Shown here: positions 4,821 to 56,465 of the stretch, piece by piece
Layout of the letters: every line of letters begins with the position of its first letter
Position numbering within the stretch: the stretch's first letter is position 1
Assembly (NCBI GenBank): GCA_964304625.1
Contig: OZ199838.1
Location: forward strand, 2,953,947 to 3,017,946
Reading direction: 5' to 3'
DNA length: 64,000 nucleotides
Origin: Kudoa neothunni
Taxonomy: Eukaryota > Animalia > Cnidaria
Made by a program: the position numbers and the translations under genes
The notes under the pieces: model-generated
Databases searched by the model: none
Seen by the model: only the letters and a program-made list of their open reading frames with translations
What the model was told of the DNA's origin: nothing

Positions 4821-5607
4821 TCGAATTATTTGAGTTTATTAGGAAGATATTACCTCAATATTTTTAAATTAATTTATCATTATAAGTTATCTTTGATATC
4901 TAAAATTTTATAATTAATGATTGAATATATATATCTCATTCAAACAAAAATTTGTCACATTATCTTATAACTCAAAATTTGATAAGCTAATATAAAAGAA
5001 TATTTATTTAATTAAACCTATTTTTTAAGGTAAAATTTTTGTATTCCTTCATGTTTAGCAAATGAGTATACAAAATTAATGAGAATGTACTGACATTCAT
5101 TCGTTATAAGACTATTTATCTTTAAGTGATATAGCTTTTTGAAAAATTAATAATCTTTAATCAAACTTTTTGAAATTTCTTAACCTATTTCATTTTTTTT
5201 GATAAAATATTTAATAATATTATATAGATCTTATCAAATGCCCATATCACCTTGGAGATAATATTGATTAGTACCTTATATCATATTTATTATCATATTT
5301 AGTTATTATAATAGTTAACGTAGTTCACGCTATACCTACGATACTGTAGAAAAGTGTGTAAAATTTTTCACGAACTATATATTTTTTCTGTGTTACTATA
5401 CAAAAAATATAATTTTTCAATGTTTCGCATTTGATATTATGGAAATAATACATGTATTTTTTGTAAACGAGATAAGTTATTTTCATGACAAGATATTCAG
5501 AATATTTTGTTTATAGTTTCATCAATCTAAAAAAATATTTTGAATATCACTCAGTTAATAAAAAACGCAAAAACATGTTAAACAAAAATATTTAATGAGC
5601 TAAAAAT

Positions 5608-20299: not shown

Positions 20300-21099
20300 A
20301 ATCTCATTGAACATTTTATGTGCATATAACATTGTCAATTCGTACATAAATGTATTGTAGTTTTTTTACAAACTATACACCTACGTTTCTTTTTTGCAGG
20401 ATGGGTATTAAGCAAGGGTTTTTTGCACAATGATGACGCTTGGAGTTTGGATAGGAACGATGTTCTGGTAAGTTTTTCATGGTCACTAATGCTAATTAAA
20501 CATGTTACGATATTCCGAATATGGTTTAACAATTTTATTTTTCCATCATTTGTATAGGTAACCAATTTATATGAGTTAACCGCAGCCAGGGATAACATAT
20601 TGGTAAACTGGGGCCAGTACCATTCTTTAGATTTTATATTTACTCTGTAACATGAAACTGAAGCATCGACTCCTCCCATGTATTTATTGTACATATAACA
20701 CATGTAAGGTTGAGGAACGTTGTCGGATCTGTTGGACAGGTTCGGCATTTAGTGCATTACTCATTAGAGCTACAGGTTTTGTGTCTCTTCAATATAGACA
20801 ATTAATGCCAAATTCTTTTTCCTTAAATGTTTCGAAGAAACCTCTCGATTTTTTTTCCATCACTTTATTTGTTGTAAGCGGGCATTTGGAAGTACGATTG
20901 GTTCTCACGGTGCCGGTTGCTTTGAGGGATCTTTTCTTTAGTTCAACGAACAATTTATAGGATGTGAAAAAATTGTCCATATAAATATGAGCGTTTGGTT
21001 TATCCTTAAGATCGTCCGCAAAATTCAGCACAACACTGCCACCGAGGCCAAAATATTTATCATATTTCACTGACTTACCTGTATAAACGTCAAAGCTAT
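20300..21099 (-). pseudogene. piggyBac (PGBD3-like) transposase, 3' half
   Basis: FDVYTGKS..GLGGSVVL, YMDNFFTSY, ATGTVRTNR, YNKYMGGVD, WYWP, RRCIVC. The 5' side is replaced by repeat D. Confidence 0.88.
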
Positions 21100-43443: not shown

Positions 43444-43520
43444 GCCGAACTAGCGCAGTCAGGTTAGCGCATCAGTCTCATAATCTGGGGGGTCGTGTGT
43501 TTCGACTCACACGTTCGGCG
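43444..43520 (+). tRNA. tRNA-Met (CAT), elongator type
   Basis: GCCGAAC/GTTCGGC perfect acceptor stem, GCGC/GCGC D stem, TCAGT-CTCATAA-TCTGG anticodon arm typical of elongator Met, GTGTG/CACAC T stem. The T loop has one extra T relative to the copy at 49791-49807 (possible sequencing error). Confidence 0.9.
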
Positions 43521-43527
43521 ATTGTCG

Positions 43528-43533
43528 TTTTTT
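43528..43533 (+). terminator. Pol III terminator (T6) of tRNA-Met
   Basis: TTTTTT 7 nt after the discriminator base; duplicated at 49823-49828. Confidence 0.75.
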
Positions 43534-43581
43534 GATTTCTTCAGCCTAGTTTTGCGAAATTTTTGCATATACTGATCGCGA

Positions 43582-44961
43582 ATGAATTTGGAAACGATTG
43601 AACTAACTATCGGAGGAATTGAATCAGTAGTTGCTGAGATCGACACGAGTCTGTACTCGGATGTCGTCCGGCATTACTTTGACGAATTTTTGAGAATCTC
43701 TCGTCTTAAGATGAAGAAGTCTCCTTTCCTAGAACGAATCAGACGATACGTTCAATTGACTTTTACATTTACCGATATTTCCGATGATAAGGCATTTTTG
43801 CGCCCAGATAGCTTAGATGATAATCCAATTCATGCCTCCCCAGGTAATAAACAATTTTGCGGCGCATCTATCGGATCTGTTCTCTTAAAGAATGGTATCC
43901 TAGAGAGCGTGTTAGATAGCTTTAATGTTGGTGATCGCGATAACTATGTTAAATCTGTGTTGATTACCGTTTTCGGTAGCGACCAGAGGTCTGCAGCGTT
44001 GTCCGGTGTTCCTAAAAAGCTTGACGAGTTAAGTTCACCCGATGAACGTAACGAACTAACCTTACTGATGAATGATATTTGCCGGAGTATCATCTTCATG
44101 ATAAAGCAATCCACATTCCCATCGTTCCTGTTTAATGTTGATGGTAGCGTAAATCTTACGGATGATTTGGTCCTTCATCCGTACGTTGATTTCCCAGTGG
44201 AATTCGCAATATACGAATTATCACATGCACCATTCAAAGTTAACCTTACCAATGATCCTAAACTTCTTGCAAAGTTTGAAAAGTTTGCAAAGCTTGATCG
44301 GTCCGGCATATCCACCACTCCAATGACAGTACATGAATCGGCGTCGTCGGCGGCCGATGATTGTATTATATTGGGAGATAATAACAAAAATAATAACGAG
44401 GCTCTGAACCTTATCGAAAACCTTAATTTTAACAAAACAGAGGTTCCAGAGCATGATAATGTTAAAATTAATCAATCTTTTTCTTCTTTTAAACCAAAAA
44501 CTGCCTTAAGTGCTGAAAATTGCGATGCATCCAACAATTCGGTCTCATTAGCCGTCTTAGCGAATGATAAACAATTGGAGGACTTTGTTATTGAATCCGG
44601 CAGTAAACAATTTACCTGTATTCAACCTGTCAACATACATAATCCAGTTCATGAACCTGACAATGACATTGTCGGTGACGTGTCAACTGGAATATTATCC
44701 GTGATTGTTGATGAATCTGTTGATAACGATAACGATATTGTTGACACTTGTGTTAACATTGATGAGGAATCATTCGTGACGACTCGTCGGCTAGTTGGGA
44801 AGCCATCGTTGTCAACATTAGCAGATGTAAAGCAATCTAACGTAGATGCGCGTGTTTATATGAAGGATGAACCGAAGCCATTTGTTTTCGACATCACTTC
44901 GGATGCGTCGCCATTTACATCTAACCACTTCATTATCAGATTCAATCGATATGAGCTTTAA
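43582..44961 (+). CDS. N-terminal part of the element 1 protein (unrecognised domain of about 240 aa, then low-complexity region)
   Basis: 459-aa ORF whose N-terminus aligns without gaps to element 2 (GIESVVAEIDTS vs GIEAKLAEIDLT; RLKMKKSPFL vs RLKLKMSPFL; TFPSFLFNVDGSVNLTDDL vs TFPFFLFDIDGSINVTVDL). Confidence 0.8.
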   Translation: MNLETIELTIGGIESVVAEIDTSLYSDVVRHYFDEFLRISRLKMKKSPFLERIRRYVQLTFTFTDISDDKAFLRPDSLDDNPIHASPGNKQFCGASIGSVLLKNGILESVLDSFNVGDRDNYVKSVLITVFGSDQRSAALSGVPKKLDELSSPDERNELTLLMNDICRSIIFMIKQSTFPSFLFNVDGSVNLTDDLVLHPYVDFPVEFAIYELSHAPFKVNLTNDPKLLAKFEKFAKLDRSGISTTPMTVHESASSAADDCIILGDNNKNNNEALNLIENLNFNKTEVPEHDNVKINQSFSSFKPKTALSAENCDASNNSVSLAVLANDKQLEDFVIESGSKQFTCIQPVNIHNPVHEPDNDIVGDVSTGILSVIVDESVDNDNDIVDTCVNIDEESFVTTRRLVGKPSLSTLADVKQSNVDARVYMKDEPKPFVFDITSDASPFTSNHFIIRFNRYEL

Positions 44962-46749
44962 TGCGCAAGCTGCGAAATCAACATTATCTAATAACACTCC
45001 TGATAGCGACATAGTCGTTATCAGTGACAATCAACATCACCAACTTAAATGCTCTCTAAATAAATCACGCATTCATATAAAACAAGATAAAACTGATAGC
45101 AACACTCACATTACAAATTCTAGCAATAAATCAACCAAGCTTAAGCGTAATAAACGTGGGAAGTTAATTCCTACAATTATTACAAAATTAGCTGTAGAAT
45201 CAAGTGAGCAGCGACCGCAATTAAAAGCTGAGACGCCATTAAGCGAGAATTAGGGATAATAATGAGCAGCCATGTTTAAATCAGTCAACCAATGCCTTAG
45301 GTGAGAATACAATGCTTAACGATGATGACATCAATAATATTAATTCCAACGTTAAGTTATTAAGTTCAAACACTAAGAATAGTCCAGCCCCTACAACATG
45401 CGCTGCAAAAGATTCATCTTTGCCAGTATTTTCGACAGATCTTAATCTAAACAAAATAGGAAGCATAGATGTAGCTAATCAGCCTAATTTTAATAATGAC
45501 GCCTGGGAGGATCATGACTTTGGTTCGCAGAACATTTTTAATGTACAGTCTGCGTTAAATCCTCCAACATTAACTTCTAGTAAGTGCAATACTGATGTGC
45601 CATTAATCGAAACCTCAACATTAAATTCAAAACAAACCAACTAAGAGGCGCATTTCCACAATTAATGACTACCTGGCGGAAGCCAAAAATAAGTCTAAGT
45701 GTACTAAATTTATTGAAGGCAACTACAATGAGCTTAGTTTACTTAATGATGGCGCAACAGATAAAGATCTGTTGGCCATTTTCGTACCACCTCCTCCATC
45801 CTATAATAAGCAATTAGGCAGTGTTAACAATAATATTAAATCTAATATTAATACCGAAGATACTCCTTCTATTCGGAAGAAGTATTAGAGGAAATTGACA
45901 CTCGCGAACGCCAGAAGCGAATACAGCAAAGAGCTTCATAATTTCGTAAGAAACAAACTGAAGTGCTGGAACAATGTTCCAGTGATTTAAGGTCGCTTCT
46001 CGCTAATACCAACCCACAGATCTATCGATCAAGTCTACTCCTCCTTCATAGGTGTGGCACACGCTGCTGCGACGGCTATACGTATGGTTTTCCATCGTAA
46101 AGTACCTGAACAAAAGCCGCCCACTAAGGATACAACCGAACACACTTCCCCCACTTCCCCCCACTTCTCCGTCTATTTTCTCCATCCACAACAAACCACC
46201 TAAAAGATAAGCAAATTCACACTCAAGACAATCAAGATAAGATCCACAATCCACCTGAAGAACCTGTCACAGAAGCCAAGAAATTGCGTGGTAATGTACA
46301 GATTCAACCAGAAGAGATGCTACCGCCAAATTACAGAGAAATCTCCTAAATGGTGTGAAGCATCTGCCGCAGACATAATAGAATCACTTTCCTACATCAA
46401 CTTCCAAGGATGTCCAGAACATTCTGTGCGGCCCAAATGCTGAAGAACTCTCTCCAATCCATATTCCAGCTTTGGACAACTCAGAATCCACACAACCACA
46501 TCCACACGTAACTAATTTTCATTCTGAATCTGAGGAAAAGTCTTCCGATGAATGCCCTCCCTATGAGGACATTCGTGACGTTGATAAAGTACCAGATTTT
46601 TACAGTGCGCAGTCCGCTATCTCCACCTTCTTATGCTCGCCCTAAATTTAAATTAACACCTTCACCCTTAGCGTCGCAAAATCTTCAATTAACTAAGCAA
46701 TCTAATTCACAAATTCCTCCAGTGAATGTATCTGCCGAGGCCGTCTATC

Positions 46750-48117
46750 AATCCGGAAACCAATTCAGTGACTTTTATGTTGCTGAGGAGGAAGTAAGTT
46801 TTGCTCTAGACCGTGCTAAGAAAGATACCTCTCCTGGTACAGACGGGATTCATATGCGCTTTTGGAAAAAAGTTCCCTCTATGAATGCCCCACTTGGCCA
46901 AACTTTTCAATTTAATCCTTAATTCGTCACAATTTCCAGAAGACTGGCTTGTCAGTCGACTTGTCCTTATTCCAAAATCCAATGAAGATAATATTGATGC
47001 ATTCCGATCCTCTGAATTATCGACCTATTTCGATAACTCAGACTATTTACAGAATTTTTATGAGCATTATGAACAAAAAAGTTAGGTGCAGTCGTCGAGT
47101 TAAGTCCCTCCCAGAAGGGTTTCATTGCTAGCAATGGATGTGTTGAGCATGCCATTTGTCTTGCAAGAAATTCTCGACGATGTACGTAGGAATATGCACC
47201 GTCTGTCCGCGACATGGATAGATTTGCGTAAAGCTTTCGACTCTGTGCCGCATGAAGAACTTTTTAAACAACTGCGCTTTCAAAACGCGCCTCGTAATCT
47301 TCTCCAATGTCTGCAACATATGTATGCAAATTGTTATAATTTGGTCACTGATAAAGACGGCGGATCTGGCCTACTTTACCATCATGGTAGAGGTGTGCGT
47401 CAGGGATGCCCTTTGTCACCCTTATTATTCAATTTGGTCATCGACCCTTTCCTCAAGCAAATCGACAATTCAGACCTGGGTTATGAACTTCGTGAACAAC
47501 GTTTTGGTTCATTAGCGTACGCTGATGATATCATTCTTCTGGCCAAAGATCATAACCAACTTCGAGACATTCTACGTCGATTTGAAGAATTTGCCAACAA
47601 TCTTAATTTACGCGTGAATCACGGAAAAAGTGCGGCAATTAATGTCACCTTTAGAAGTAGGAAGCGCATACTTAATGACCCCATTATCCTTCCATACACA
47701 TTTCAAGGTGTGGACATCCCTATGATGACAGACTATTATAAGTACCTAGGTACTTGTAAGAATCTTGCATCTTTTAAGGACTTACCACCTTGTTTTGAAG
47801 AATTTTCCACCAATTTAGTTAAAATTTCCAATTCTCCCTTGTTGCACTTTATGAAAGTCAACCTTCTCAAAACATACATGTATCCGACCTTAGAATATTC
47901 CATGAAGAACAACATTGTGCGCATCGAAGAGTTAAAACGCGTAGACAGGGAAATTAAGTCAGCGGTTCGCCAATGGCTTAGGTCTACCTCATTCTACAAC
48001 AAAGTCCCTTCTGTACACTCCGTGTGCAGTTGGTGGTCTCGGTCTTCGTTGCCTCAAATTAGATTTCCCCTGTTTAAGGCTCGCCTCTGCAATGAATCTC
48101 ATTCATTCTCTGGATGA
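46750..48117 (+). CDS. Reverse transcriptase domain of element 1 (frameshifted)
   Basis: All canonical non-LTR RT motifs including YADD; ORFs 46548-46922, 46885-47085, 46949-47131 and 47125-48117 join through small indels. Confidence 0.95.
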
Positions 48118-49778
48118 AAGGGTTGCATGTGTAGCCGAAAAATCAATCTCTGCTATCATTTCAAGGAGGACAAATGATAGTATGTCTCCTGAGGAGTATT
48201 TTAATCGTGACACTGAGCTGATTGTGAGCAGAGATGTGAGAAGCATCTTTTCTAGTATTCGTTTGAATGCTAAAGCTCTGCAGCTCCAAGTAATCCAAGT
48301 TGATGAAGACAATCCTACGAAAGTTGACATCGACCCAAGTTACTTGCAAGATCCCACCCACATTCCGTCATATCAACAGAGAGGTGCCACCAGGATTAAA
48401 CGCTTGCGTTGGCATGTTCAGTCGATGTTTCTTGACGCATGGAAGTCCATGAGTACTCAGGGGACGCTCCGTTGAGTGCTTTATTGGTAGTAAAGCCGCA
48501 AACTCTTGGATTACCCAAGGCGATGTTTCTCCCTATGTATACCGCTTTGGAATCCTTGGGCGAGGTGAATGCGCTGCCGACAAAGTGCGTGCTACAAACA
48601 CGTAGGCTAACCTCCGAAGCTAGCTGCAGACGTTGTGTAAAAAGCAACGGAACACCTTGGACACATCCTTGGTGGCTGTAAGTTTGGTGAAGGGGCGCGG
48701 TCCGCTCGACACAACCATGTTGTTGACCTCATTGCTGAGCAGATAAAGCCCAATAAAAACTGGGTTTTTATTCCTCGACACAATCTTTCCTCAAATCCCC
48801 TCGAATCGCCGTCCAGATTTTGTGCTTTTGAATGAAAAGACAAAAGATGTCAGAATCTGTGAACTGACCATCTCATTTGAGTCCGATAGTTCCCGTCTTG
48901 ACCAGGTTCATGCCCACAAGCTGAACAAATACCGCGAGGAACAATCTCAATGGATGGAACTAGGCTATTCCTGCTCTTTGCATGCCCTTGTCTTTGGAGC
49001 CCTTGGGGGCGCATCTTGATGCAAACCAAGAGGCATATAAAGCGCTCTTTTGTTAAAAATAAGCGCAAGGTTCATGCTCTTCAAAAATCCATCACGCGCT
49101 CCATTTTACTAGATTCCTCGAATATTTGGAGAGCTCATGTCAAAGATACGAGAGCTACTGCTCTTGGTAAATTTGGCACAGGATGCCCCAAATATTCCCC
49201 CTAATCCTCATAACCAAGTCATCCTTGCGAGTACTTCACAAACTGTGAAGAAAACTCGCCAAAAAAACATATCCCGGTTAAATCTAACCCCTTGTCAACC
49301 CCTCAGATCGTTGTTAAAACTAATTCCCAACTAATTCCAACTTTAGAAATTAACAACTCAAATTCCCAACCACCTCCGAATAACTCAACCGCTCACTTGA
49401 AAAATTCCACCAACAACGATCTGACATATATCAATAAGAAGAAGAAATATCCTAGAGTTATCAAATCCCAACCTCTGATAACTCTTGTCCCACCACAAAC
49501 AAAATCCAAATCTCAAAAACGAAAATCCAAAAATTCCCAATCTACCCAATGTCAACCTGTGGTGCTCTGCGCAAAGTCACCCCCTTTACAGACCTCTTCG
49601 AAGTCTGTAAAGGAGTGACTTTGTTGTCAACATCCAACCATCAATCTACATGCTGCTAGCTGGTAAGTTTCATATGTGTATTTTAATTTTCATTTAGGAC
49701 CAATTCAAAAATTCAACATTCCAACCACATCAACAACTTATTTAGCTACTAAACTCTTATTTTATGTTTTGTTTATGT

Positions 49779-49851
49779 ATCTGGGGGGTCGTGTGTTCGA
49801 CTCACACGTTCGGCGATTGTCGTTTTTTGATTTCTTCAGCCTACTTTTGCG
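49779..49851 (+). repeat. Duplicated tRNA-Met 3' half + terminator + flank (73 nt; copy of 43483-43556)
   Basis: ATCTGGGGGGTCGTGTGTTCGACTCACACGTTCGGCGATTGTCGTTTTTTGATTTCTTCAGCCTA(C/G)TTTTGCG; one indel and one substitution between the copies. Confidence 0.97.
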
Positions 49852-52800
49852 CAAAAAATAAACAAAATCTATCCTAATGGTAACTAATAAGAATCGTGTG
49901 ATTTTCGTAGGTATTGAAGCCAAATTGGCGGAGATAGACCTAACTGGACATTCGGAAGTCATTCAATTTTATGCAAACGAGTACCTGAGTTCCCTTCGCT
50001 TAAAGCTGAAGATGTCTCCATTCCTTTCCAAGGTTGCTAGAGTAGTTCTTTTAACCTACAACAAACAATTTTACAATCCGAATGATTCAGCAGAAAAACA
50101 CCATCTTATCACAGTCGTTATCATCGAAGAAGCCGCTCCCAGGTAATGAATTAGTCACATGTGATTCCATTTGCACTTTCTCTCCTAAAGAGGGGGTCAA
50201 TTGGATAGCATTTTAGAGAACGTCACTTTGGGTGTTGCCATCCGATCGTCCCATTTGTTGTGGAATCTGCGTCCCGAGCTCTTATCAGTTCCGATAACGA
50301 TGACGCAACATTTGTTAGTGGGCCACCTAAAAACCTCTCTACGGTCGGTTCTGACGCGGAACGAGATGAATTAAAATCACTTTTAAATGATATTCGCCGG
50401 GAGTAATCATTTTTATGGTTTAAAAAGCGGTACTTTTCCATTTTTTCTATTTGATATTGATGGGAGTATTAATGTTACGGTTGATCTGGCACTTAATCCG
50501 TGTAAAGACTTAACAGAAAGATTTGCTGCATACGAGGAGCTCTCTTTTGCATCCAAAAAACACAATATTAAATTAGGAATGAATCCGGAATATATAATAA
50601 CGAACTCACGCCCTGTCCCCAGAAATTTCCACCTGGTGATTATATTAAGGATTTAACGCAGCCTGTAAACTGTGTGTGAACTGTAAAATAGGCTAAAAGA
50701 GAAGAACCCCAACCTTTTTATATCAGATAACGAACAAATCATTGAAGATTGTGTTGCAACTGGCAATTCTGAATCATATTCTGACTCTAAAAAGTTTACC
50801 TTGTATAATATTGATTGATGAGTGTGCGGATGAATTTGTTCAATCTGCATGCAATCAACAGTTATCTTTTCTGCAATCTAATCGTCATGCCAATATTGAA
50901 TCTGATACCTTATCAATCGGAACTACTGATGAGCAAGTTGGGAAGCCATCAGTGAAACAACCGTAATACGCGTGGACAATCCGAATGAACTGACGGACTT
51001 TTCCCTCTCGAACGTTCTTCCGATTTAGCATCCAATCTCAAAGAAAACTCAATTGATATTAATTCTACGGCGCTAGTCAATAACAAAAATTTTTCAAATC
51101 CACTTTTATCAATGATACTAGTGAATCTAGCTTTTTGTTCTCTTAACTCATCAATTTCGTGCGCAACTTTTGAAAATGAAAACACCGTTGAACCATCTAT
51201 TTTTGAAATCTAAAACACATAAACTTAAGCGTGATAGGTGTGGGTAAACTAATACCAACCATCATTATGCAAGAGTTTAATTAAGTCAAGTGAAACGCTA
51301 GCGCCACCTTTAGAGCGGCCATCCTCGACAGTTAAATCAGTTATAATGTTGAACAGCCTTGTTTAAACGAGAATAAATGTGCGATTTTAAATGAAGCACA
51401 ATCTATTAATGTTGTTGATAATAATAAAGTTAATTCCAATGTTAAAAATGTAGTAATTAATGAGAAATCGAGTTTGCCTAATAAAACAAGTGCTGCTGCG
51501 TTTGATGAAGCTGTTGTAGGATTGGATAATTATCACCTAGATACCCCAAAGTGCATTTTATGCATTAAAACCCCCGTCTAACAAACTACAAAAGCGCAAA
51601 ATACAGCAAGTTGATTATTTCCTTTCGGAGGCACGCATACAGTCCATCAAGAAAAGTCCGTCAAGTTTGTAGAACTTGACTATAAAGACATTAAGATAAT
51701 GGAGGACGTAAACTGATCACGAGTTGCACGCCATTTTCGTTCCTCCTCCCCCTAGTTATTTGAAAGAAAAAAGGTCCAAAGTTGTGTCGAAAACTATAGA
51801 GGCACCTTGCACGCCATCCATTCCGGATGAGATCCTCGAAGGTTTAGATACAAGGGAACGCCAGGTGCGCATTTCAAAAAAGAGCCGCGGAGTTTCGTAA
51901 GAAACGTACCGAGGTGCTTGAGCGTGCTACAAGCGATTTCAGGGCAATCCTGGATTCCCACCCCGACTCGTCCGTGCAAAGCCTATACAGCAATTTCATA
52001 GAAACGGCGTATACAGCGGCTAAAGAATTGAGAATGGTTTACCATGCTCAAGTCAAAGATAAAAGAAACGCCAGCCAAAAATCTGAAGACTCAAATCTTC
52101 AGCCAACATCTCTCCCTCTTAATGAGGATGTCCCCAATAAGTCTTCCCAAGCTTCGCGCGATTTAAAACTAATGTCAATGAAACCAAACGATTAAGGATT
52201 CTGTACAGAAACAATCAGAAAAGCCTCATTTCATTCAAATCTTCCACCGAGTTATGACGAATTTAACACGAATCTGCAAAAACCTACAAATTCCCCCTTC
52301 TACACTTCATAAAGCTTAACTTGGTAAAAACTTACATGAACCCAACATTGAGTTTTCGATGAAGAATAACATTCTTCGCATCGAAGATCTTAAAAAGGTG
52401 GATCGTGTCAAAGAATTCAGTCAGTTCGTGGCTTTCGATGCTTAGAACTCGACTTTGCATATCTCCGACTCGCCTGCTCCATGAATCTCATCCATTATAG
52501 GGATGAGAGGATTGAGAAACTTGCGGAGCATGAAATTACAGCCATTGTCGATAAGAGGACCGACAACAGTCTCTCCTCCGAGGAATAATTTAACCGGGAT
52601 CACGAGTTGATGGCAGCCAGGGATATCCGCAGTATCTTCTAGAGCATCCGCTTGAATGCTAAATCCCTTGGCTTGCAAGTTCGGCAAGTTGATGATCAAT
52701 CTTCTTCCAAGATTGACATTGACCCAGAATATTTGCTTGATCCCTCTCATGTGTCTCCTTACCAACAATAACAATGTGGTGAAAACTCGGATTCGTCGTC

Positions 52801-53650
52801 TTCGGTGGTATGTTCAAGTTCAATTTTCTGGATACTTTTAAGTCCCAGACTGTTCAGGGACGCTCCGTTGGTAGCAAACTTGCAAACTCATGGATAACGC
52901 ATGGCGATGTTTCTCCTTATGTATACCGTTTTGGGAATCCTTGGGCGAATGAATGCACTGCCAACGAAGTACGTGTTGCAGACACGTAGACTTGCCCCCT
53001 AATGCCTACTGCAGACCTTGCTTTAGGGGAAACGGAACTCCTTGGACACGTCCTTGGTGGCTACATGTTCGGCGAAAGAGAAAGGTCCGCCCGACATAAC
53101 CATGTTACGGATTTGCTCTGCGAACAGATAAAACCCAATAAAAATTGGGTTCTATTCCAAGACACGATTTTCCCCACAAATTCGAAGCAACCGACGCCCA
53201 GATATGTCCTCTTGAACGAGAAGGAGACAAGCAGGTACTTATCTGCGAGCTTTCCATCACCTTTGAGTCTGATGCCGACCGTTTGAAGCAAGTCCACGCG
53301 CATAAAGTGGCGAAGGTATGTTAATGAGCAGTCTCAATGGAGAGAACTCGGTTATTCATGCACTCTACACGCCCCTGTTTTTGGTGCCCTTGGCGCTCAT
53401 TTCGATGAAAACCAAGTGGGTTTATAAAGAGCTTTTCATAAAGAATAAACGCAAGGTCACACAACTCCAAAAACAATCACCCGATCAGTCATCCTGGACT
53501 CTTCCAATATTTGGAGAGCCCATGTCCACGACAACAAAGCAACTATGCACGGAATGTTTGGTGCCGTTGGTCCTTCTCAACCAAACAAAATTCAACTACC
53601 TCCAAGGTCTACTGAAGTCAATAACGACCTAAATCTTAATTCCTTGAAAA
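49852..53650 (+). mobile_element. RLE non-LTR retrotransposon, element 2 (diverged relative, RT core deleted)
   Basis: ATG 49877 with homologous N-terminal domain and AIFVPPPPSY motif. Sequence jumps at about 52215 directly to the post-RT thumb (NLPPSYDEFNTNL..MKNNILRIEDLKKVDR), then LGHVLGG, RHNHV, ICELSITFE, IWRAHV. Confidence 0.9.
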
Positions 53651-55370
53651 TATCGTGGCGATGACTAAATCACAATCAACTCCTATTGTCGAGATCTCTG
53701 ATGATACCCCAAATCTCAATCAAAACCTCTTGTATCTTAAAAGACCATATAAATATAAATAAACACGATTCATCAATACCTAGTAATAGTGAGGATGATG
53801 ATGTGATACTTTGCGAAAGTGAAGCTATCACCAAACCATCCCAACCACACCTCAACTCTCATGTACCACTTCCAAATCAAACTCCAACACAAGAGACATC
53901 CAAAACAGCAATGTTTGGTTATTACGAGGATAAAAAACCCTATCCGAAATCAAGCAAACGTACGTTAATGACTTGCACGCTTTTCTAACCAAGCACAACA
54001 ATGACTCCGTTCTGACATTAAATGAATTCTATGATGAATTCATACGTTTATCAACTGCACAAGTACAATTACTAATGATATATTACCTTCCAGAGCGCCC
54101 AACTCCAAATCGACCACCCAACATTAGAAGAAACGAGCAAAACGTGGTCCCCGAAGACTTTCAACGAACATCCCGAAGATAAAAACTAAACAACTCCCAC
54201 AAAAATCAACAATTCCCCTGACAAAACCATAGTGATTGAAGAGGAAACATTTAACAACGTTCAACAGGAAGCGTCCAACACACAAAATTCTCAAATTAAT
54301 ACCAAAACAAACCAAATTCAAAATCACTCTGCGCAAGATCAGTGAACAGTGACGAAGCAATCCCGACTTCGATCCCTCCTTAATTCAACACAACAGAATG
54401 CTGTGCGTGAAATAACTGATCCAACACCGACTTGGTGTAGAGCCCCGGCTGATGAAATAGTTAATCTTTCATTTTTTTCTGCCTAGAAACCTCCAGAAGA
54501 ACTTCGAGACCCATTTAATCGGAATAAGCTGTTAAATAAACACCGCTAATCCATCGAATCAGAAAAGATTAAATCAATTCCAATTTCAGTTCTGATCAAA
54601 CACTCGGAACAAAACCAACCAATTCTCAACACTGATTCCAATGAATTTAACGACAAAACTGATATTTCCTCAACAGCAAAAACCACGATATCTCAATCAG
54701 ACAAATCGAACAATTCGAAAATAATGTTCTAATCAAATTCTAATAACAAATCAAACAAAAAGTCATCCAACATTCCAAATATAAATCCATACATTTACAC
54801 AACCAATTCCGATTTATTATTCGTTCCGACCCTAAATAAATTCACACCAAGCCCAACCACTAGCAAAACTCAATCAAATCAATTTCTATCTTTAGAATCA
54901 TTAGAGGCTAAAGACCAAAATCATCATCATCAAAACACCAATCCGGATTGGAAATCAATTTATCCTGACAACTATTACACACTATTCCAATTCGATGAGG
55001 AAAACACAATCAGAGCAAACCAAAATGCAAAATCAGACACCATCTCTGGCACGGATGGGATTCACATGAAGTTTTGGGAATGTTTACCCAATTTGGATGT
55101 TGTCCTCACTCCAATCTTCAATAAAATTCTCAATTCAACAGTGGAGTGGTGCCGAAACAATGGTTTGAGGCTAAAATGATTTTAATCCCAAAGATAGAAT
55201 TACCAGATCCCAACTCCACAGTTGACTACAGGCCCATATGTATTACACAAACATTATATAGAATATTCATATCAGCTCTAAACACTAATTCAGAACATCA
55301 ATCACATTATCAGTGAATTAGAAAGGATTTCAACCGGGAGAGGTGTGTGGAGCATGCTTTATCGCTGTAA
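53650..55370 (+). mobile_element. Third RT-bearing unit of the same lineage, truncated at both ends
   Basis: Helical block LHAFLTKHNNDSV..FYDEFIRLS..LMIYY, low-complexity linker, then AKSDTISGTDGIHMKFW, PKQWFEAKMILIPK, DYRPICITQTLYRIF, KGFQ..CVEHALSL; stops abruptly at about 55370. Confidence 0.85.
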
Positions 55371-56465
55371 AAAATCTTCCATAACTTTTCTCCATTGAAA
55401 CTTACTGTTTTGTTTTTTTCCGAAATGTTTAATTTTCTCTAATGAGTCATGATTTTAATAATATAGACGCCATCTTTGATGAATGGGAGGACTATGATAA
55501 TTTATTTTTAAAAATTATCGATTACATATATAATAGTTTAGACAGACGATAACTCAGGGGGTGATTATATACGAACATAACAAACATTAATCTAGAATTT
55601 AAGATAAGTACAACCAGCTTACACTGGTACACTTTATTGAAAAATATTATCCAACTCATGCAACAAAAGCTTTTAACCATGTGATAAAGGAGGAATCTAC
55701 ATTAAATTGAATCGGTTTGTTCTGCATCGGGGCGGCAAACAAAAACAAACTAATGTTTACCGTTTCAAAGCAATCACCCAATTTTAAATTCCACGATGTG
55801 GTATGCACAATCGCAAATATGGAAACTCCTACTGAAGTTGCGTTAGAATTATACAACATTCTGGGTGACGTTGTAATTAAAAAAATCATATTTGGCATGT
55901 ACACATCGATATGACGAGGGATAAACAATTTTGATTGTACAGCAAACTCTCTTATTGCATCGGCTACCCAAAATGAGTCAATTCCATGTGACATTTTTCT
56001 TGATTTCACAAAATCAATACATAGGATTGCAACGTCGTCATATGTCATCTGTGATGCAGCTGATCCCAGAAAGTTGTATTCAAGAACAAAAATTTTAATT
56101 TTGTTATTTTTCTGTTATCACAAAATGACCACATTTGATATACGCCCACATTAATCTGCTCACGCTAAAAAATTACGCTTTTTTGTAAAAATATACTAAT
56201 ACAATTAATCACTAGGTTAATACCGTTATAAGTATAATGATCGCTCCTATAGTCGCACTAAGAAAATGTGTTAATCTGAAATGACTTTTGGAAGCACCTC
56301 TAACTGTTCAAAGTGTAAAAAAGATAGGTCTTCACATTTGATGTGAAAATTAAAACTTTAGTTCAGATTTAGTAGAGTAAAACATATATTCAAACAAGGG
56401 AATGGCGAAAGTTAGCCGTAGATATTTTTATGCGCTCGTATCAGTATCACGCCTGCGCACAAAAA

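What the first reader, a model, noticed from the sequence alone, without database searches (positions are those of the whole stretch)
43444..49851. RLE retrotransposon that appears to insert in the tRNA-Met anticodon loop while leaving an intact tRNA
Seen: a complete tRNA-Met (43444-43520) sits immediately 5' of element 1. Element 1's 3' tail (...tttatgttttgtttatgt) joins directly to ATCTGG..., the tRNA 3' half starting just after the anticodon (CTCATA|ATCTGG). The duplicated block (43483-43556 vs 49779-49851, 73 nt, 2 differences) covers the variable loop, T arm, acceptor 3' strand, T6 terminator and about 23 nt of flank, whereas the two element bodies behind it are strongly diverged. Established: RLE-type non-LTR elements (R2, R4, NeSL, Utopia) are site-specific for multicopy RNA genes and usually disrupt them with short or no TSDs; some tRNA-targeting relatives are known. 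Inference: priming occurs at a nick in the anticodon loop. The tRNA is then preserved either by an unusually long (about 73 nt) staggered target duplication or because the element carries the tRNA 3' half as its 5' end. This parallels bacterial integrative elements that cross over in anticodon loops and restore the tRNA. It would also regenerate the target, explaining the head-to-tail array.
Basis: partly seen in the sequence, partly recalled or inferred. Interest (0 to 1): 0.92.

Follow-up and report, generated by a model that had tools for sequence, protein, structure and literature searches.

The report
Decayed tRNA-Met-rebuilding retrotransposon array
Behind the genome's only detectable elongator tRNA-Met gene lies a decayed stack of R2-like jumping genes that enter at the 3' edge of the anticodon loop yet leave a complete tRNA gene with a terminator in front, which would explain how the family lives in essential single-copy tRNA genes.

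Summary
A tRNA-Met(CAU) gene lies at 43444-43520. Element 1 (E1) runs to 49778. Its tail abuts a second copy (49779-49851) of the tRNA 3' half, T6 terminator and 23 further bases. That copy is 97% identical to 43483-43556, while the element bodies are only 69-78% alike. E1 and E2 are frameshifted R2-like elements (reverse transcriptase plus restriction-like endonuclease, RLE). E2 has lost its 3' end and a third fragment follows.

The pattern is genome-wide. At least 16 RT-bearing loci lie 2-5.4 kb behind a same-strand tRNA gene. Every intact 3' tail read joins a tRNA 3' half at nt 36-40 (Met, Lys-UUU, Gln-UUG, Trp-CCA, Phe-like and others). Two metagenome contigs from elsewhere show the same architecture.

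The scan found this family before on other DNA of this genome (tRNA-Cys, Lys, Gln). This window adds the tRNA-Met instance.

How the tRNA is preserved is not settled. I favour a block carried in the element RNA. The 23 bases after T6 are element 5' UTR, not native flank, and a sister lineage starts its ORF inside the tRNA half. A staggered cut ending near the tRNA's 3' end is not excluded. tRNA-specific RLE elements are known (planarian LIN15_SM), but they break their target.

The parts
43444..43520 (+). Complete elongator-type tRNA-Met(CAU) gene, anticodon 43479-43481. It is the only copy detectable in the genome. Its T loop is 8 nt.
   Evidence: ARAGORN. Rfam RF00005 at 45.5 bits. BLAST of the 77 nt and an anticodon-arm pattern search find no second gene. 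Two near-matches to the pattern are not tRNAs.
43483..43556 (+). Upstream copy of the duplicated block: tRNA 3' half, ATTGTCG, T6 terminator (43528-43533) and 23 nt that are the start of the element 5' UTR.
   Evidence: The segment after the tRNA is homologous to the 5' UTR of the tRNA-Lys sister lineage.
43557..49778 (+). Element 1 (E1) body. It is full-length but decayed, with its ATG at 43582.
   Evidence: tblastn of the intact sister protein covers aa 43-1828 in at least 8 frame changes. The N-terminal ORF is 43582-44961. The RT lies at about 46840-47979, with Pfam RVT_1 in 47125-48114. The CCHC/RLE region lies at about 48456-49010. ORFs are listed. The last 300 nt are unique in the genome.
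49741..49778 (+). E1 3' end: a small hairpin (49741-49753, 5 bp with a 3-nt loop) followed by a T/A/G-rich tail ending ..TTTATGTA.
   Evidence: Seen directly in the sequence. Comparable hairpins and a TTGTAT(A/T)ATT end motif occur in the other lineages.
49779..49851 (+). Downstream copy of the block: tRNA-Met 3' half from nt 38/39, T6 (49823-49828) and 23 nt. It joins the E1 tail to E2.
49852..53990 (+). Element 2 (E2) of the same lineage group, ATG at 49877. It is heavily decayed. The part matching aa 725-1275 (RT core) is deleted, and its tail and the following block are missing.
   Evidence: tblastn map, blastn against E1, sequence.
53990..55385 (+). Third element fragment, matching about aa 690-1075 of the intact relative and truncated at both ends. 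Non-element DNA follows.
   Evidence: tblastn. An RT motif-0-like GTDGIHMKFWE is read at about 55050.

Best explanation
The stretch is an old, decayed head-to-tail pile of tRNA-Met-specific members of a clade of R2-like non-LTR retrotransposons. These encode a single ORF with reverse transcriptase, a CCHC knuckle and a restriction-like endonuclease (RLE).

Inferred from how RLE elements work: the endonuclease nicks the bottom strand of the tRNA gene at the 3' edge of the anticodon loop (nt 36-40; here 37|38 or 38|39). The nick primes reverse transcription of the element RNA, so the element tail comes to lie against the tRNA 3' half.

Shown: a second copy of that 3' half plus a Pol III terminator ends up between the tRNA 5' half and the element body. 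The gene in front stays complete and terminated, and it can be hit again. New copies therefore stack on the tRNA side and older ones decay behind them.

My preferred version (about 0.55) is that the block is part of the element RNA, fully or from the acceptor strand onward. The 5' junction would then be set in register by homology with the resident gene, so the terminator behind the tRNA is element-supplied.

Shown: the anatomy, the family, the junction positions and the association with tRNA genes. Inferred: the nick site, the order of events, and whether the RNA carries the tRNA half.
For: Anatomy of the window.

RLE/R2-type protein. The intact sister copy aligns to R2 structures over RT through endonuclease (E 4e-82). 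It matches Pfam RVT_1 and zf-RVT and shows the CCHC and PD..D motifs.

Family-wide junction rule:
- tRNA-Lys(UUU): six blocks in one array and nowhere else, with the full gene at the array's 5' end.
- tRNA-Gln(UUG): full gene plus seven internal blocks behind four different tails.
- tRNA-Trp(CCA).
- A Phe-like tRNA, a class-II tRNA and three other tRNA halves.

Genome-wide association. Of the 38 best tRNA genes, 15 have a family RT 2-5.4 kb downstream on the same strand, and so does the window's tRNA-Met. Two more carry the family's 5' UTR motif.

Independent organism(s). Metagenome contigs encoding 46-48% identical proteins show tail | tRNA 3' half | T-run | next element. In the tree they sit beside the lineages that use the same tRNA.

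Reads. The unitig graph of the source sample has the 49-nt tRNA-Lys block as a shared node inside a 5.8-kb repeat unit.

For an RNA-borne block:
1. The 23 nt after T6, and the TCGTTTTT context, are homologous and in register with the 5' UTR of the tRNA-Lys sister lineage across the block boundary. None of the 18 trailers of unoccupied tRNAs has TCGTTTTT.
2. In the intact tRNA-Lys type-2 copies the frame is open through the block. The only in-frame ATG ahead of the conserved N-terminal domain lies inside the tRNA T arm.
3. In the tRNA-Gln array a patch of 13 differences is confined to the acceptor 3' strand and first trailer. It occurs in 2 of 8 blocks, one of them in front of a distinct lineage. 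All variants still pair with the resident 5' acceptor strand.
Against: - No RNA data. The RNA and DNA raw-read runs under the same species label held no reads of this organism, so the RNA 5' end is unknown.
- No empty allele or orthologous empty site was available.
- No array end with native flank was read. Every last block I reached is followed by another element's 5' remnant.
- Sharp identity boundaries look like target duplication. In the window the block is 97% identical and the bodies about 70%. In the tRNA-Lys array two deeply separated lineages share an identical 49-nt block including 14 trailer bases.
- The published planarian relative LIN15_SM appears to make a duplication of about 39 bp inside tRNA-Arg (machine-read figure). 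A staggered cut is therefore a plausible ancestral property.
- The ATG inside the tRNA half could be bypassed by non-AUG initiation.
- The 8-nt T loop leaves the function of this tRNA-Met unproven.
Confidence: 0.85

Rival explanations
1. Pure staggered-cut target-site duplication. The element RNA starts after the block. The protein nicks the bottom strand at nt 38/39 and the top strand 45-75 nt downstream, and gap repair duplicates the native 3' half and trailer.
For: - There are sharp drops of identity at the block ends.
- Two distant lineages in the tRNA-Lys array share an identical 49-nt block.
- Precedents exist. R9 of rotifers makes a very long duplication; the paper is cited, and the length of 126 bp is from my memory. 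Planarian LIN15_SM appears to make a duplication of about 39 bp within the tRNA.
Against: - The last 23 nt of the window block, and the terminator context, are homologous to the 5' UTR of a sister lineage at a different tRNA locus. They continue in register into the E1-specific UTR. A blind cut would then have copied part of E2 and joined E1 in register by coincidence.
- Shared-block lengths differ: 49, 73 and about 100 nt.
- The alternating alpha/beta patch in the tRNA-Gln array cannot arise by serial duplication of one native sequence without extra recombination.
- The type-2 ORF needs the ATG that lies in the block.
Confidence: 0.22
2. Short duplication plus element-supplied terminator. The top strand is cut at or near the tRNA's 3' end, or at the T stem as in LIN15_SM. 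The duplication is then only the 27-38 nt inside the tRNA, and the element's own 5' end provides the acceptor strand and/or the T-run.
For: - It fits the element-type terminator and UTR directly behind tRNA-Met, -Lys and -Phe.
- It fits the start of the beta patch exactly at the acceptor 3' strand in the tRNA-Gln array.
- The LIN15_SM 5' junction lies after the T arm.
Against: It does not explain why the ORF of the tRNA-Lys type-2 copies starts in the T arm, unless transcripts begin upstream anyway. It cannot be told from a full head with the data in hand. I count it as a sub-case of the best explanation rather than a contradiction.
Confidence: 0.2
3. Ordinary tandem segmental duplication or unequal crossing-over of a unit made of tRNA fragment plus element, without site-specific insertion. 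Alternatively, an assembly artefact at 49779.
For: Arrays can grow or shrink by unequal exchange between blocks. Mosaic units in the tRNA-Gln array suggest some recombination.
Against: - Uniform duplication predicts equal divergence of block and body. Observed values are 97% and about 70%.
- The same tail | tRNA-half junction recurs at nine or more different tRNAs, with different lineages, and in foreign metagenome contigs.
- The sequence on both sides of the 73-nt block is unique, so a mis-join is unlikely.
- The analogous tRNA-Lys junction is present in the read graph.
Confidence: 0.03
4. Mirror reading. The block belongs to the 3' end of the upstream element: a read-through transcript ending at the T-run. 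Insertion then happens just after the tRNA terminator, so the tRNA is never cut.
For: The structure is formally symmetrical. From my memory, read-through 3' target sequence helps priming in R1 and R2. A T-run would give a defined 3' end.
Against: - It still needs an original insertion at nt 38-40 to place a 3' half downstream.
- The published relatives have their 3' junction inside the tRNA.
- In the tRNA-Gln array the beta-patch block sits in front of the distinct lineage b (the L015 element), while the element upstream of that block carries the same tail as elements followed by alpha blocks.
- The ORF start of the tRNA-Lys type-2 copies lies in the block in front of them.
Confidence: 0.05

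Closest known systems
LIN15_SM, LIN25_SM (planarian) and NeSL-1_TV (Trichomonas): tRNA-gene-specific RLE non-LTR retrotransposons (Kojima and Jurka 2015, PMC4640811, text and S6 Fig)
   Same: - They are RLE-type, insert in sense orientation and have a precise 3' junction inside a tRNA gene.
- The LIN15_SM tail (..TTGTATAATAATAAT..) resembles the TTGTAT(A/T)ATT end motif of most lineages here.
- The 5' junction of LIN15_SM lies about 39 nt downstream of the 3' junction, so a long duplication of tRNA sequence also occurs there.
   Different: - LIN15_SM enters at about nt 26/27. Its upstream tRNA copy stops after the T arm, so the gene is broken. Its targets are multicopy.
- Here the entry is at nt 36-40 and the upstream copy is complete and has a terminator. 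The targets tested are single-copy.
- No reference sequences were available, so relatedness to LIN/NeSL could not be tested by tree.
R2 (28S rDNA) and its relatives R8 and R9
   Same: - The best solved-structure matches are R2 proteins, over RT, linker, CCHC and RLE.
- Both have a single ORF, no poly(A) tail and a structured 3' UTR end.
- Both are site-specific for an RNA gene and occur head to tail.
- R9 is the precedent for an exceptionally long target duplication. The paper is cited; its details are from my memory.
   Different: - The target is a tRNA gene, not rDNA.
- No N-terminal zinc finger or Myb domain was detected in about 950 N-terminal residues.
- No HDV-like ribozyme or other Rfam family was detected at the 5' ends.
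- The clade is separate from the spider proteins labelled R2 in my tree.
- R2 inactivates the rDNA unit it enters.
Utopia (U2 snRNA genes)
   Same: It is an RLE element living in a low-copy small-RNA gene, sometimes in arrays, with several lineages sharing one target.
   Different: Utopia leaves disrupted U2 genes that outnumber the intact ones. Its authors call its persistence in a low-copy target unexplained. Here the target is rebuilt.
Dada DNA transposons (tRNA and snRNA genes; PMC8869645)
   Same: Several Dada families insert around the anticodon loop of tRNA genes.
   Different: They are DDE DNA transposons, insert in the opposite orientation, disrupt their targets and rely on multicopy targets.
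Bacterial and archaeal integrative elements that recombine in tRNA genes and restore the 3' part from attP (established knowledge, not tested here)
   Same: The functional logic is the same: the incoming element carries or recreates the 3' part of the tRNA, so the gene stays intact and remains a target.
   Different: Those elements use a tyrosine or serine recombinase acting on DNA, not target-primed reverse transcription. There is no homology.

Membership tests
RLE-type (R2-superfamily) non-LTR retrotransposon | Reverse transcriptase domain of the non-LTR type | tested here: met
   Pfam RVT_1 matches window 47125-48114 at E 8e-26. The intact sister copy matches at E 6e-37. It also aligns to R2 and LINE-1 ORF2 structures.
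RLE-type (R2-superfamily) non-LTR retrotransposon | C-terminal CCHC zinc knuckle followed by a PD-(D/E)xK restriction-like endonuclease, with no APE domain | tested here: met
   The CRRC..H....C motif, RHN and RPD..D motifs are read in the sister protein. The alignment to R2Tg runs to its C-terminus. There is no APE Pfam hit. In window E1 the same region (about 48456-49010) is present but frameshifted.
RLE-type (R2-superfamily) non-LTR retrotransposon | Precise, sequence-specific 3' junction in sense orientation with the target | tested here: met
   Junctions lie at nt 36-40 of nine or more tRNA species. At least 16 RT loci lie behind same-strand tRNA genes.
R2 sensu stricto | Insertion in the conserved 28S rDNA site | tested here: not met
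   All junctions read are in tRNA genes.
R2 sensu stricto | N-terminal zinc finger(s) and Myb DNA-binding motifs | tested here: not met
   Pfam finds nothing, and a regex finds no C2H2 pattern, in the roughly 950 N-terminal residues of the intact sister copy. Remote folds were not tested.
R2 sensu stricto | 5' HDV-like self-cleaving ribozyme | tested here: inconclusive
   No Rfam match at E up to 1-5 over the window elements and 14 related loci. A divergent ribozyme would be missed.
NeSL / LIN group (tRNA-specific LIN15_SM-like) | RT phylogeny places the element within NeSL/LIN | not testable with these tools
   No Repbase reference sequences were available. In my tree the clade is separate from the Ulp1-bearing (NeSL-like) and RNase H-bearing (Utopia-like) database proteins. 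The tree is unrooted and made with FastTree only.
NeSL / LIN group (tRNA-specific LIN15_SM-like) | Ulp1-type protease domain (NeSL proper) | tested here: not met
   No PF02902 hit.
Long-TSD RLE elements (R9-like behaviour) | The duplicated flank is native target sequence on both sides of a single insertion | tested here: inconclusive
   The tRNA part could be native. The part after the tRNA is element-type. No solo insertion with native downstream flank, and no empty site, was available.

The most novel reading that the evidence does not exclude
A clade of R2-like retrotransposons carries the 3' half of its own target tRNA plus a Pol III terminator at the 5' end of its RNA. Each target-primed insertion at the anticodon loop therefore rebuilds the gene. 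This would be a retroelement counterpart of bacterial tRNA-integrating islands. It would let the family occupy about 40% of a nearly single-copy tRNA gene set and keep lineage-specific tRNA targets across species.
Probability: 0.5. Interest if true: 0.9.

Novelty: new variant of a known kind. Interest (0 to 1): 0.8.

Why it matters
Site-specific retrotransposons are thought to survive by hitting multicopy, dispensable targets. How they persist in low-copy genes is an open problem, stated explicitly for Utopia in U2 genes (PMC4640811).

Here the targets tested are single-copy tRNA genes, presumably essential. The elements avoid killing the host by leaving a complete, terminated gene in front of themselves. 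That also regenerates the target and explains the arrays.

If the RNA-borne-head version holds, three things follow:
- It is a new way to make a retrotransposon insertion neutral.
- It is a natural example of 'insert without destroying the landing site', which bears on R2-based gene-insertion tools.
- It is a case where host tRNA 3' halves and terminators are repeatedly replaced by reverse-transcribed copies. That could shape tRNA evolution, as the 8-nt T loop of this tRNA-Met hints.

Tried and rejected
- **Reads.** Only one 2021 sample holds this genome, as unitigs. One DNA and two RNA raw-read runs under the same species label gave zero reads on the tRNA-Lys junction locus. There is therefore no test of expression, RNA ends, or presence/absence alleles.
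- **Genome letters.** I worked with RT-centred loci plus small targeted pieces. Eight pieces overshot the junctions, which were already inside the loci held, and one missed the tRNA-Trp by 25 nt (corrected).
- **Rfam.** No ribozyme or other family was found at the element ends.
- **Pfam.** Nothing was found in the long N-terminal region.
- **N-terminal protein search.** It finds only the tRNA-Lys type-2 copies and the window elements, so the N-termini of the other lineages are too diverged to locate 5' ends this way.
- **Terminator motif.** I first thought ATTGTC(G)T6 was a universal element-borne terminator. Trailers of unoccupied tRNAs also end in T4-7 followed by G, so only the narrower TCGTTTTT...CAGC motif of one subclade is informative.
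- **Second tRNA-Met gene.** Two near-matches of the anticodon arm are not tRNAs.
- **Literature.** Searches for anticodon-loop-inserting, tRNA-restoring retrotransposons found none in the held library. Absence there is not proof.
- **Organism.** It was not identified and run labels are coded.
- **Tree.** The IQ-TREE run did not finish, so the tree is FastTree only.

Full report
**1. The observation**

ARAGORN finds one tRNA in the 64-kb window: tRNA-Met(CAT) at 43444-43520, anticodon 43479-43481. Rfam's tRNA model scores it 45.5 bits against a cut-off of 29, with single-base insertions in the D, variable and T loops.

The stretch 43483-43556 recurs at 49779-49851. The two copies differ by one T indel in the T loop and one G/C change. 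A search of the whole 40.26-Mb genome finds only these two copies.

The block holds the tRNA from nt 38/39 to the discriminator, then ATTGTCG, a T6 run, and 23 more bases. Element 1 (E1) ends ..TTTATGTA at 49778, directly against the block.

The element bodies align only in patches, at 69-78% identity, against 96% for the block.

Three qualifications apply:
- The complete tRNA has an 8-nt T loop, whereas the downstream fragment keeps the canonical 7 nt.
- E1 is full-length but shows at least 8 frame changes.
- E2 lacks its RT core and its 3' end. A third internal fragment follows at about 53990-55385, and there is no third block.

**2. What the elements are**

Window 47125-48114 matches Pfam RVT_1. 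The genome holds 56 RT matches clustered in head-to-tail arrays, some with open frames of 1775-1901 codons.

I rebuilt one intact sister copy from adjoining natural loci, without altering any base. It lies behind tRNA-Lys and its RT piece is 59-64% identical to that of E1.

- Its 1881-aa ORF aligns to solved R2 proteins from the RT to the C-terminal endonuclease (E 4e-82).
- It shows the CCHC knuckle and the RHN and PD..D motifs.
- No zinc finger, Myb or Ulp1 domain is detectable in the roughly 950 N-terminal residues.

The family is therefore RLE-type and R2-like. It is not R2 proper.

**3. The junction rule holds across the family**

I oriented every locus held and read on from the ORF stop. 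Each element with an intact 3' end has its tail against a tRNA 3' half.

| Target | Evidence |
|---|---|
| tRNA-Lys(UUU) | Six blocks, all in one array; the complete gene sits at the array's 5' end |
| tRNA-Gln(UUG) | Complete gene plus seven internal blocks behind four different tails |
| tRNA-Trp(CCA) | Complete gene plus internal blocks |
| Phe-like, class-II and three other halves | 3' junctions only |

Homology to the tRNA begins at nt 36-40, the 3' edge of the anticodon loop. It is ambiguous by 1-2 bases because the tails end in A or T.

Most tails share a small hairpin and a TTGTAT(A/T)ATT end motif. E1 keeps a hairpin at 49741-49753.

The association is genome-wide. Of the 38 best tRNA genes, 15 have a family RT 2-5.4 kb downstream on the same strand, and the window's tRNA-Met adds a sixteenth locus. 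Two further tRNA genes are followed by the family's 5' UTR motif. By chance a given locus would have such a neighbour with probability of about 0.003.

The tRNA-Met and tRNA-Lys(UUU) genes are single-copy by BLAST and pattern search.

**4. Independent support from elsewhere**

The closest database proteins (42-48% identity) come from metagenome contigs. Two of these contigs again show tail | tRNA 3' half | T-run | next element. One involves tRNA-Gln, and the other the same tRNA half as a G000 lineage.

In a FastTree of the RT-RLE region, all tRNA-linked lineages and these metagenome proteins form one clade (SH-like support 100). The clade is separate from the Ulp1-bearing, RNase H-bearing and spider 'R2' proteins. 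The metagenome proteins pair with the genome lineages that use the same tRNA. Target choice is therefore heritable within lineages.

The unitig graph of the source sample contains the tRNA-Lys block as a 49-nt node inside a 5.8-kb repeat unit.

**5. How the tRNA is preserved**

A pure duplication of native target predicts that the sequence after the tRNA is locus-specific. It is not.

- **UTR homology across loci.** The 23 nt after T6 and the TCGTTTTT context align with the 5' UTR of the tRNA-Lys sister lineage on another chromosome. The alignment continues in register across the block boundary into the E1-specific UTR. The same motif follows the Phe-like tRNA and is absent from the trailers of 18 unoccupied tRNAs. 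The terminator behind tRNA-Met is therefore element-type.
- **ORF start inside the tRNA half.** In the intact tRNA-Lys type-2 copies the reading frame is open through the block. The only in-frame ATG ahead of the conserved N-terminal domain lies in the tRNA T arm. This implies that the mRNA spans the block.
- **A patch that tracks lineage.** In the tRNA-Gln array a patch of 13 differences is confined to the acceptor 3' strand and first trailer. It occurs in two non-adjacent blocks, one of them in front of a distinct lineage. All variants still pair with the resident 5' acceptor strand. Serial duplication of one native sequence does not give this pattern.

Some evidence points the other way.

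- Identity drops sharply at the block ends.
- Two distant lineages in the tRNA-Lys array share an identical 49-nt block.
- The published planarian LIN15_SM seems to duplicate about 39 bp inside tRNA-Arg.

One model fits all of this. The RNA carries the block, and the 5' junction forms by pairing with the resident 3' half, with crossover wherever the homology ends. This is inference. My odds are about 0.55 for an RNA-borne block (full or partial) and about 0.2 for a pure staggered cut, with the rest for mixtures.

**6. What happened in this window (inferred)**

Older elements (E3, then E2) entered the tRNA-Met gene. E1 entered last, on the tRNA side. All have since decayed, and deletions removed the 3' end of E2 and the block that should follow it.

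The 2.7% divergence of the two blocks is compatible with the number of frameshifts in E1. No intact tRNA-Met-specific copy was found in the genome.

**7. Comparison with what is known**

tRNA-specific RLE elements are published: NeSL-1_TV, LIN15_SM and LIN25_SM (PMC4640811). LIN15_SM even shares the tail motif. Its upstream tRNA copy, however, ends after the T arm, so the gene is broken, and its targets are multicopy.

Utopia likewise disrupts U2 genes, and its authors call its persistence in a low-copy target unexplained. Dada DNA transposons hit the anticodon region but disrupt the gene.

I found no paper describing retrotransposons that restore their tRNA target. The functional parallel is the bacterial tRNA-integrating island.

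The scan had already noted this family at other tRNA genes of this genome. I re-derived the Lys-UUU and Gln cases myself. The Cys and Lys-CUU cases I did not check.

**8. Verdict**

This is a new variant of a known kind. The step that preserves the tRNA remains to be shown by RNA ends, empty alleles or nick mapping.

Noticed in passing
L050:380-425; L009/L010/L011/L013 junction regions; L037:118-155 and 5148-5190: The 5' UTRs of the tRNA-Gln lineages and of a metagenome relative contain an intron-like segment (GTAAGTT .. GCTAAC .. TTTTTAG) just before the ATG. Most other lineages keep a conserved (A)TTCTAACGAT motif at the same place, in some cases inside the coding start. It could be a retained intron, a trans-splice acceptor or a protein or RNA site.
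   Followed up: no
window 49741-49778; tails listed: Lineages share a small 3' UTR hairpin with compensatory stems (GATC/GATC, TGGCC/GGCCA, TATCT/AGATA, AGCT/AGCT, TTTAG/CTAAA) and an end motif TTGTAT(A/T)ATT. The motif resembles the tail of planarian LIN15_SM in the published S6 Fig.
   Followed up: partly
window 43495-43512 vs 49790-49806: The only elongator tRNA-Met gene found has an 8-nt T loop (TTTCGACT). The non-functional downstream copy keeps the canonical 7 nt. The change is therefore in the copy expected to be under selection.
   Followed up: partly
G000 genome-wide: The tRNA gene set looks close to minimal. The 38 best hits are nearly all different genes, with only two obvious duplicate pairs (C2:688009/698477 and C1:15358995/15371099). 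About 18 of 39 genes examined are followed by this family.
   Followed up: partly
L065 (C1:5765953-5766144) and L066 (C1:7136952-7137144): tRNA-Gly(TCC) and tRNA-Arg(ACG) have no RT hit nearby. They are nevertheless followed within 100 nt by the family's 5' UTR motif (GCGATTCTAACGATGCC and GCGGATCCTAACGACGC). These may be remnants or very diverged occupants.
   Followed up: no
L013 and L010 junctions in the tRNA-Gln array: Block variants TACAACC and TACGACC replace two G.U pairs, or one, of the acceptor stem by A-U pairs. Every variant stays compatible with the resident 5' strand GGTTGTA.
   Followed up: partly
window 20335-20748 (-): A 137-aa ORF has a cysteine-rich C-terminus reminiscent of piggyBac-derived transposase ends. 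The window otherwise has only short exons and about 27% G+C, against about 40% in the elements.
   Followed up: no
L061 (C1:14310506-14310591) and L070 (C3:9254943-9255032): Two tRNA genes of 87 and 91 nt appear to carry introns next to the anticodon. One is tRNA-Ile(TAT). ARAGORN could not name the other.
   Followed up: no
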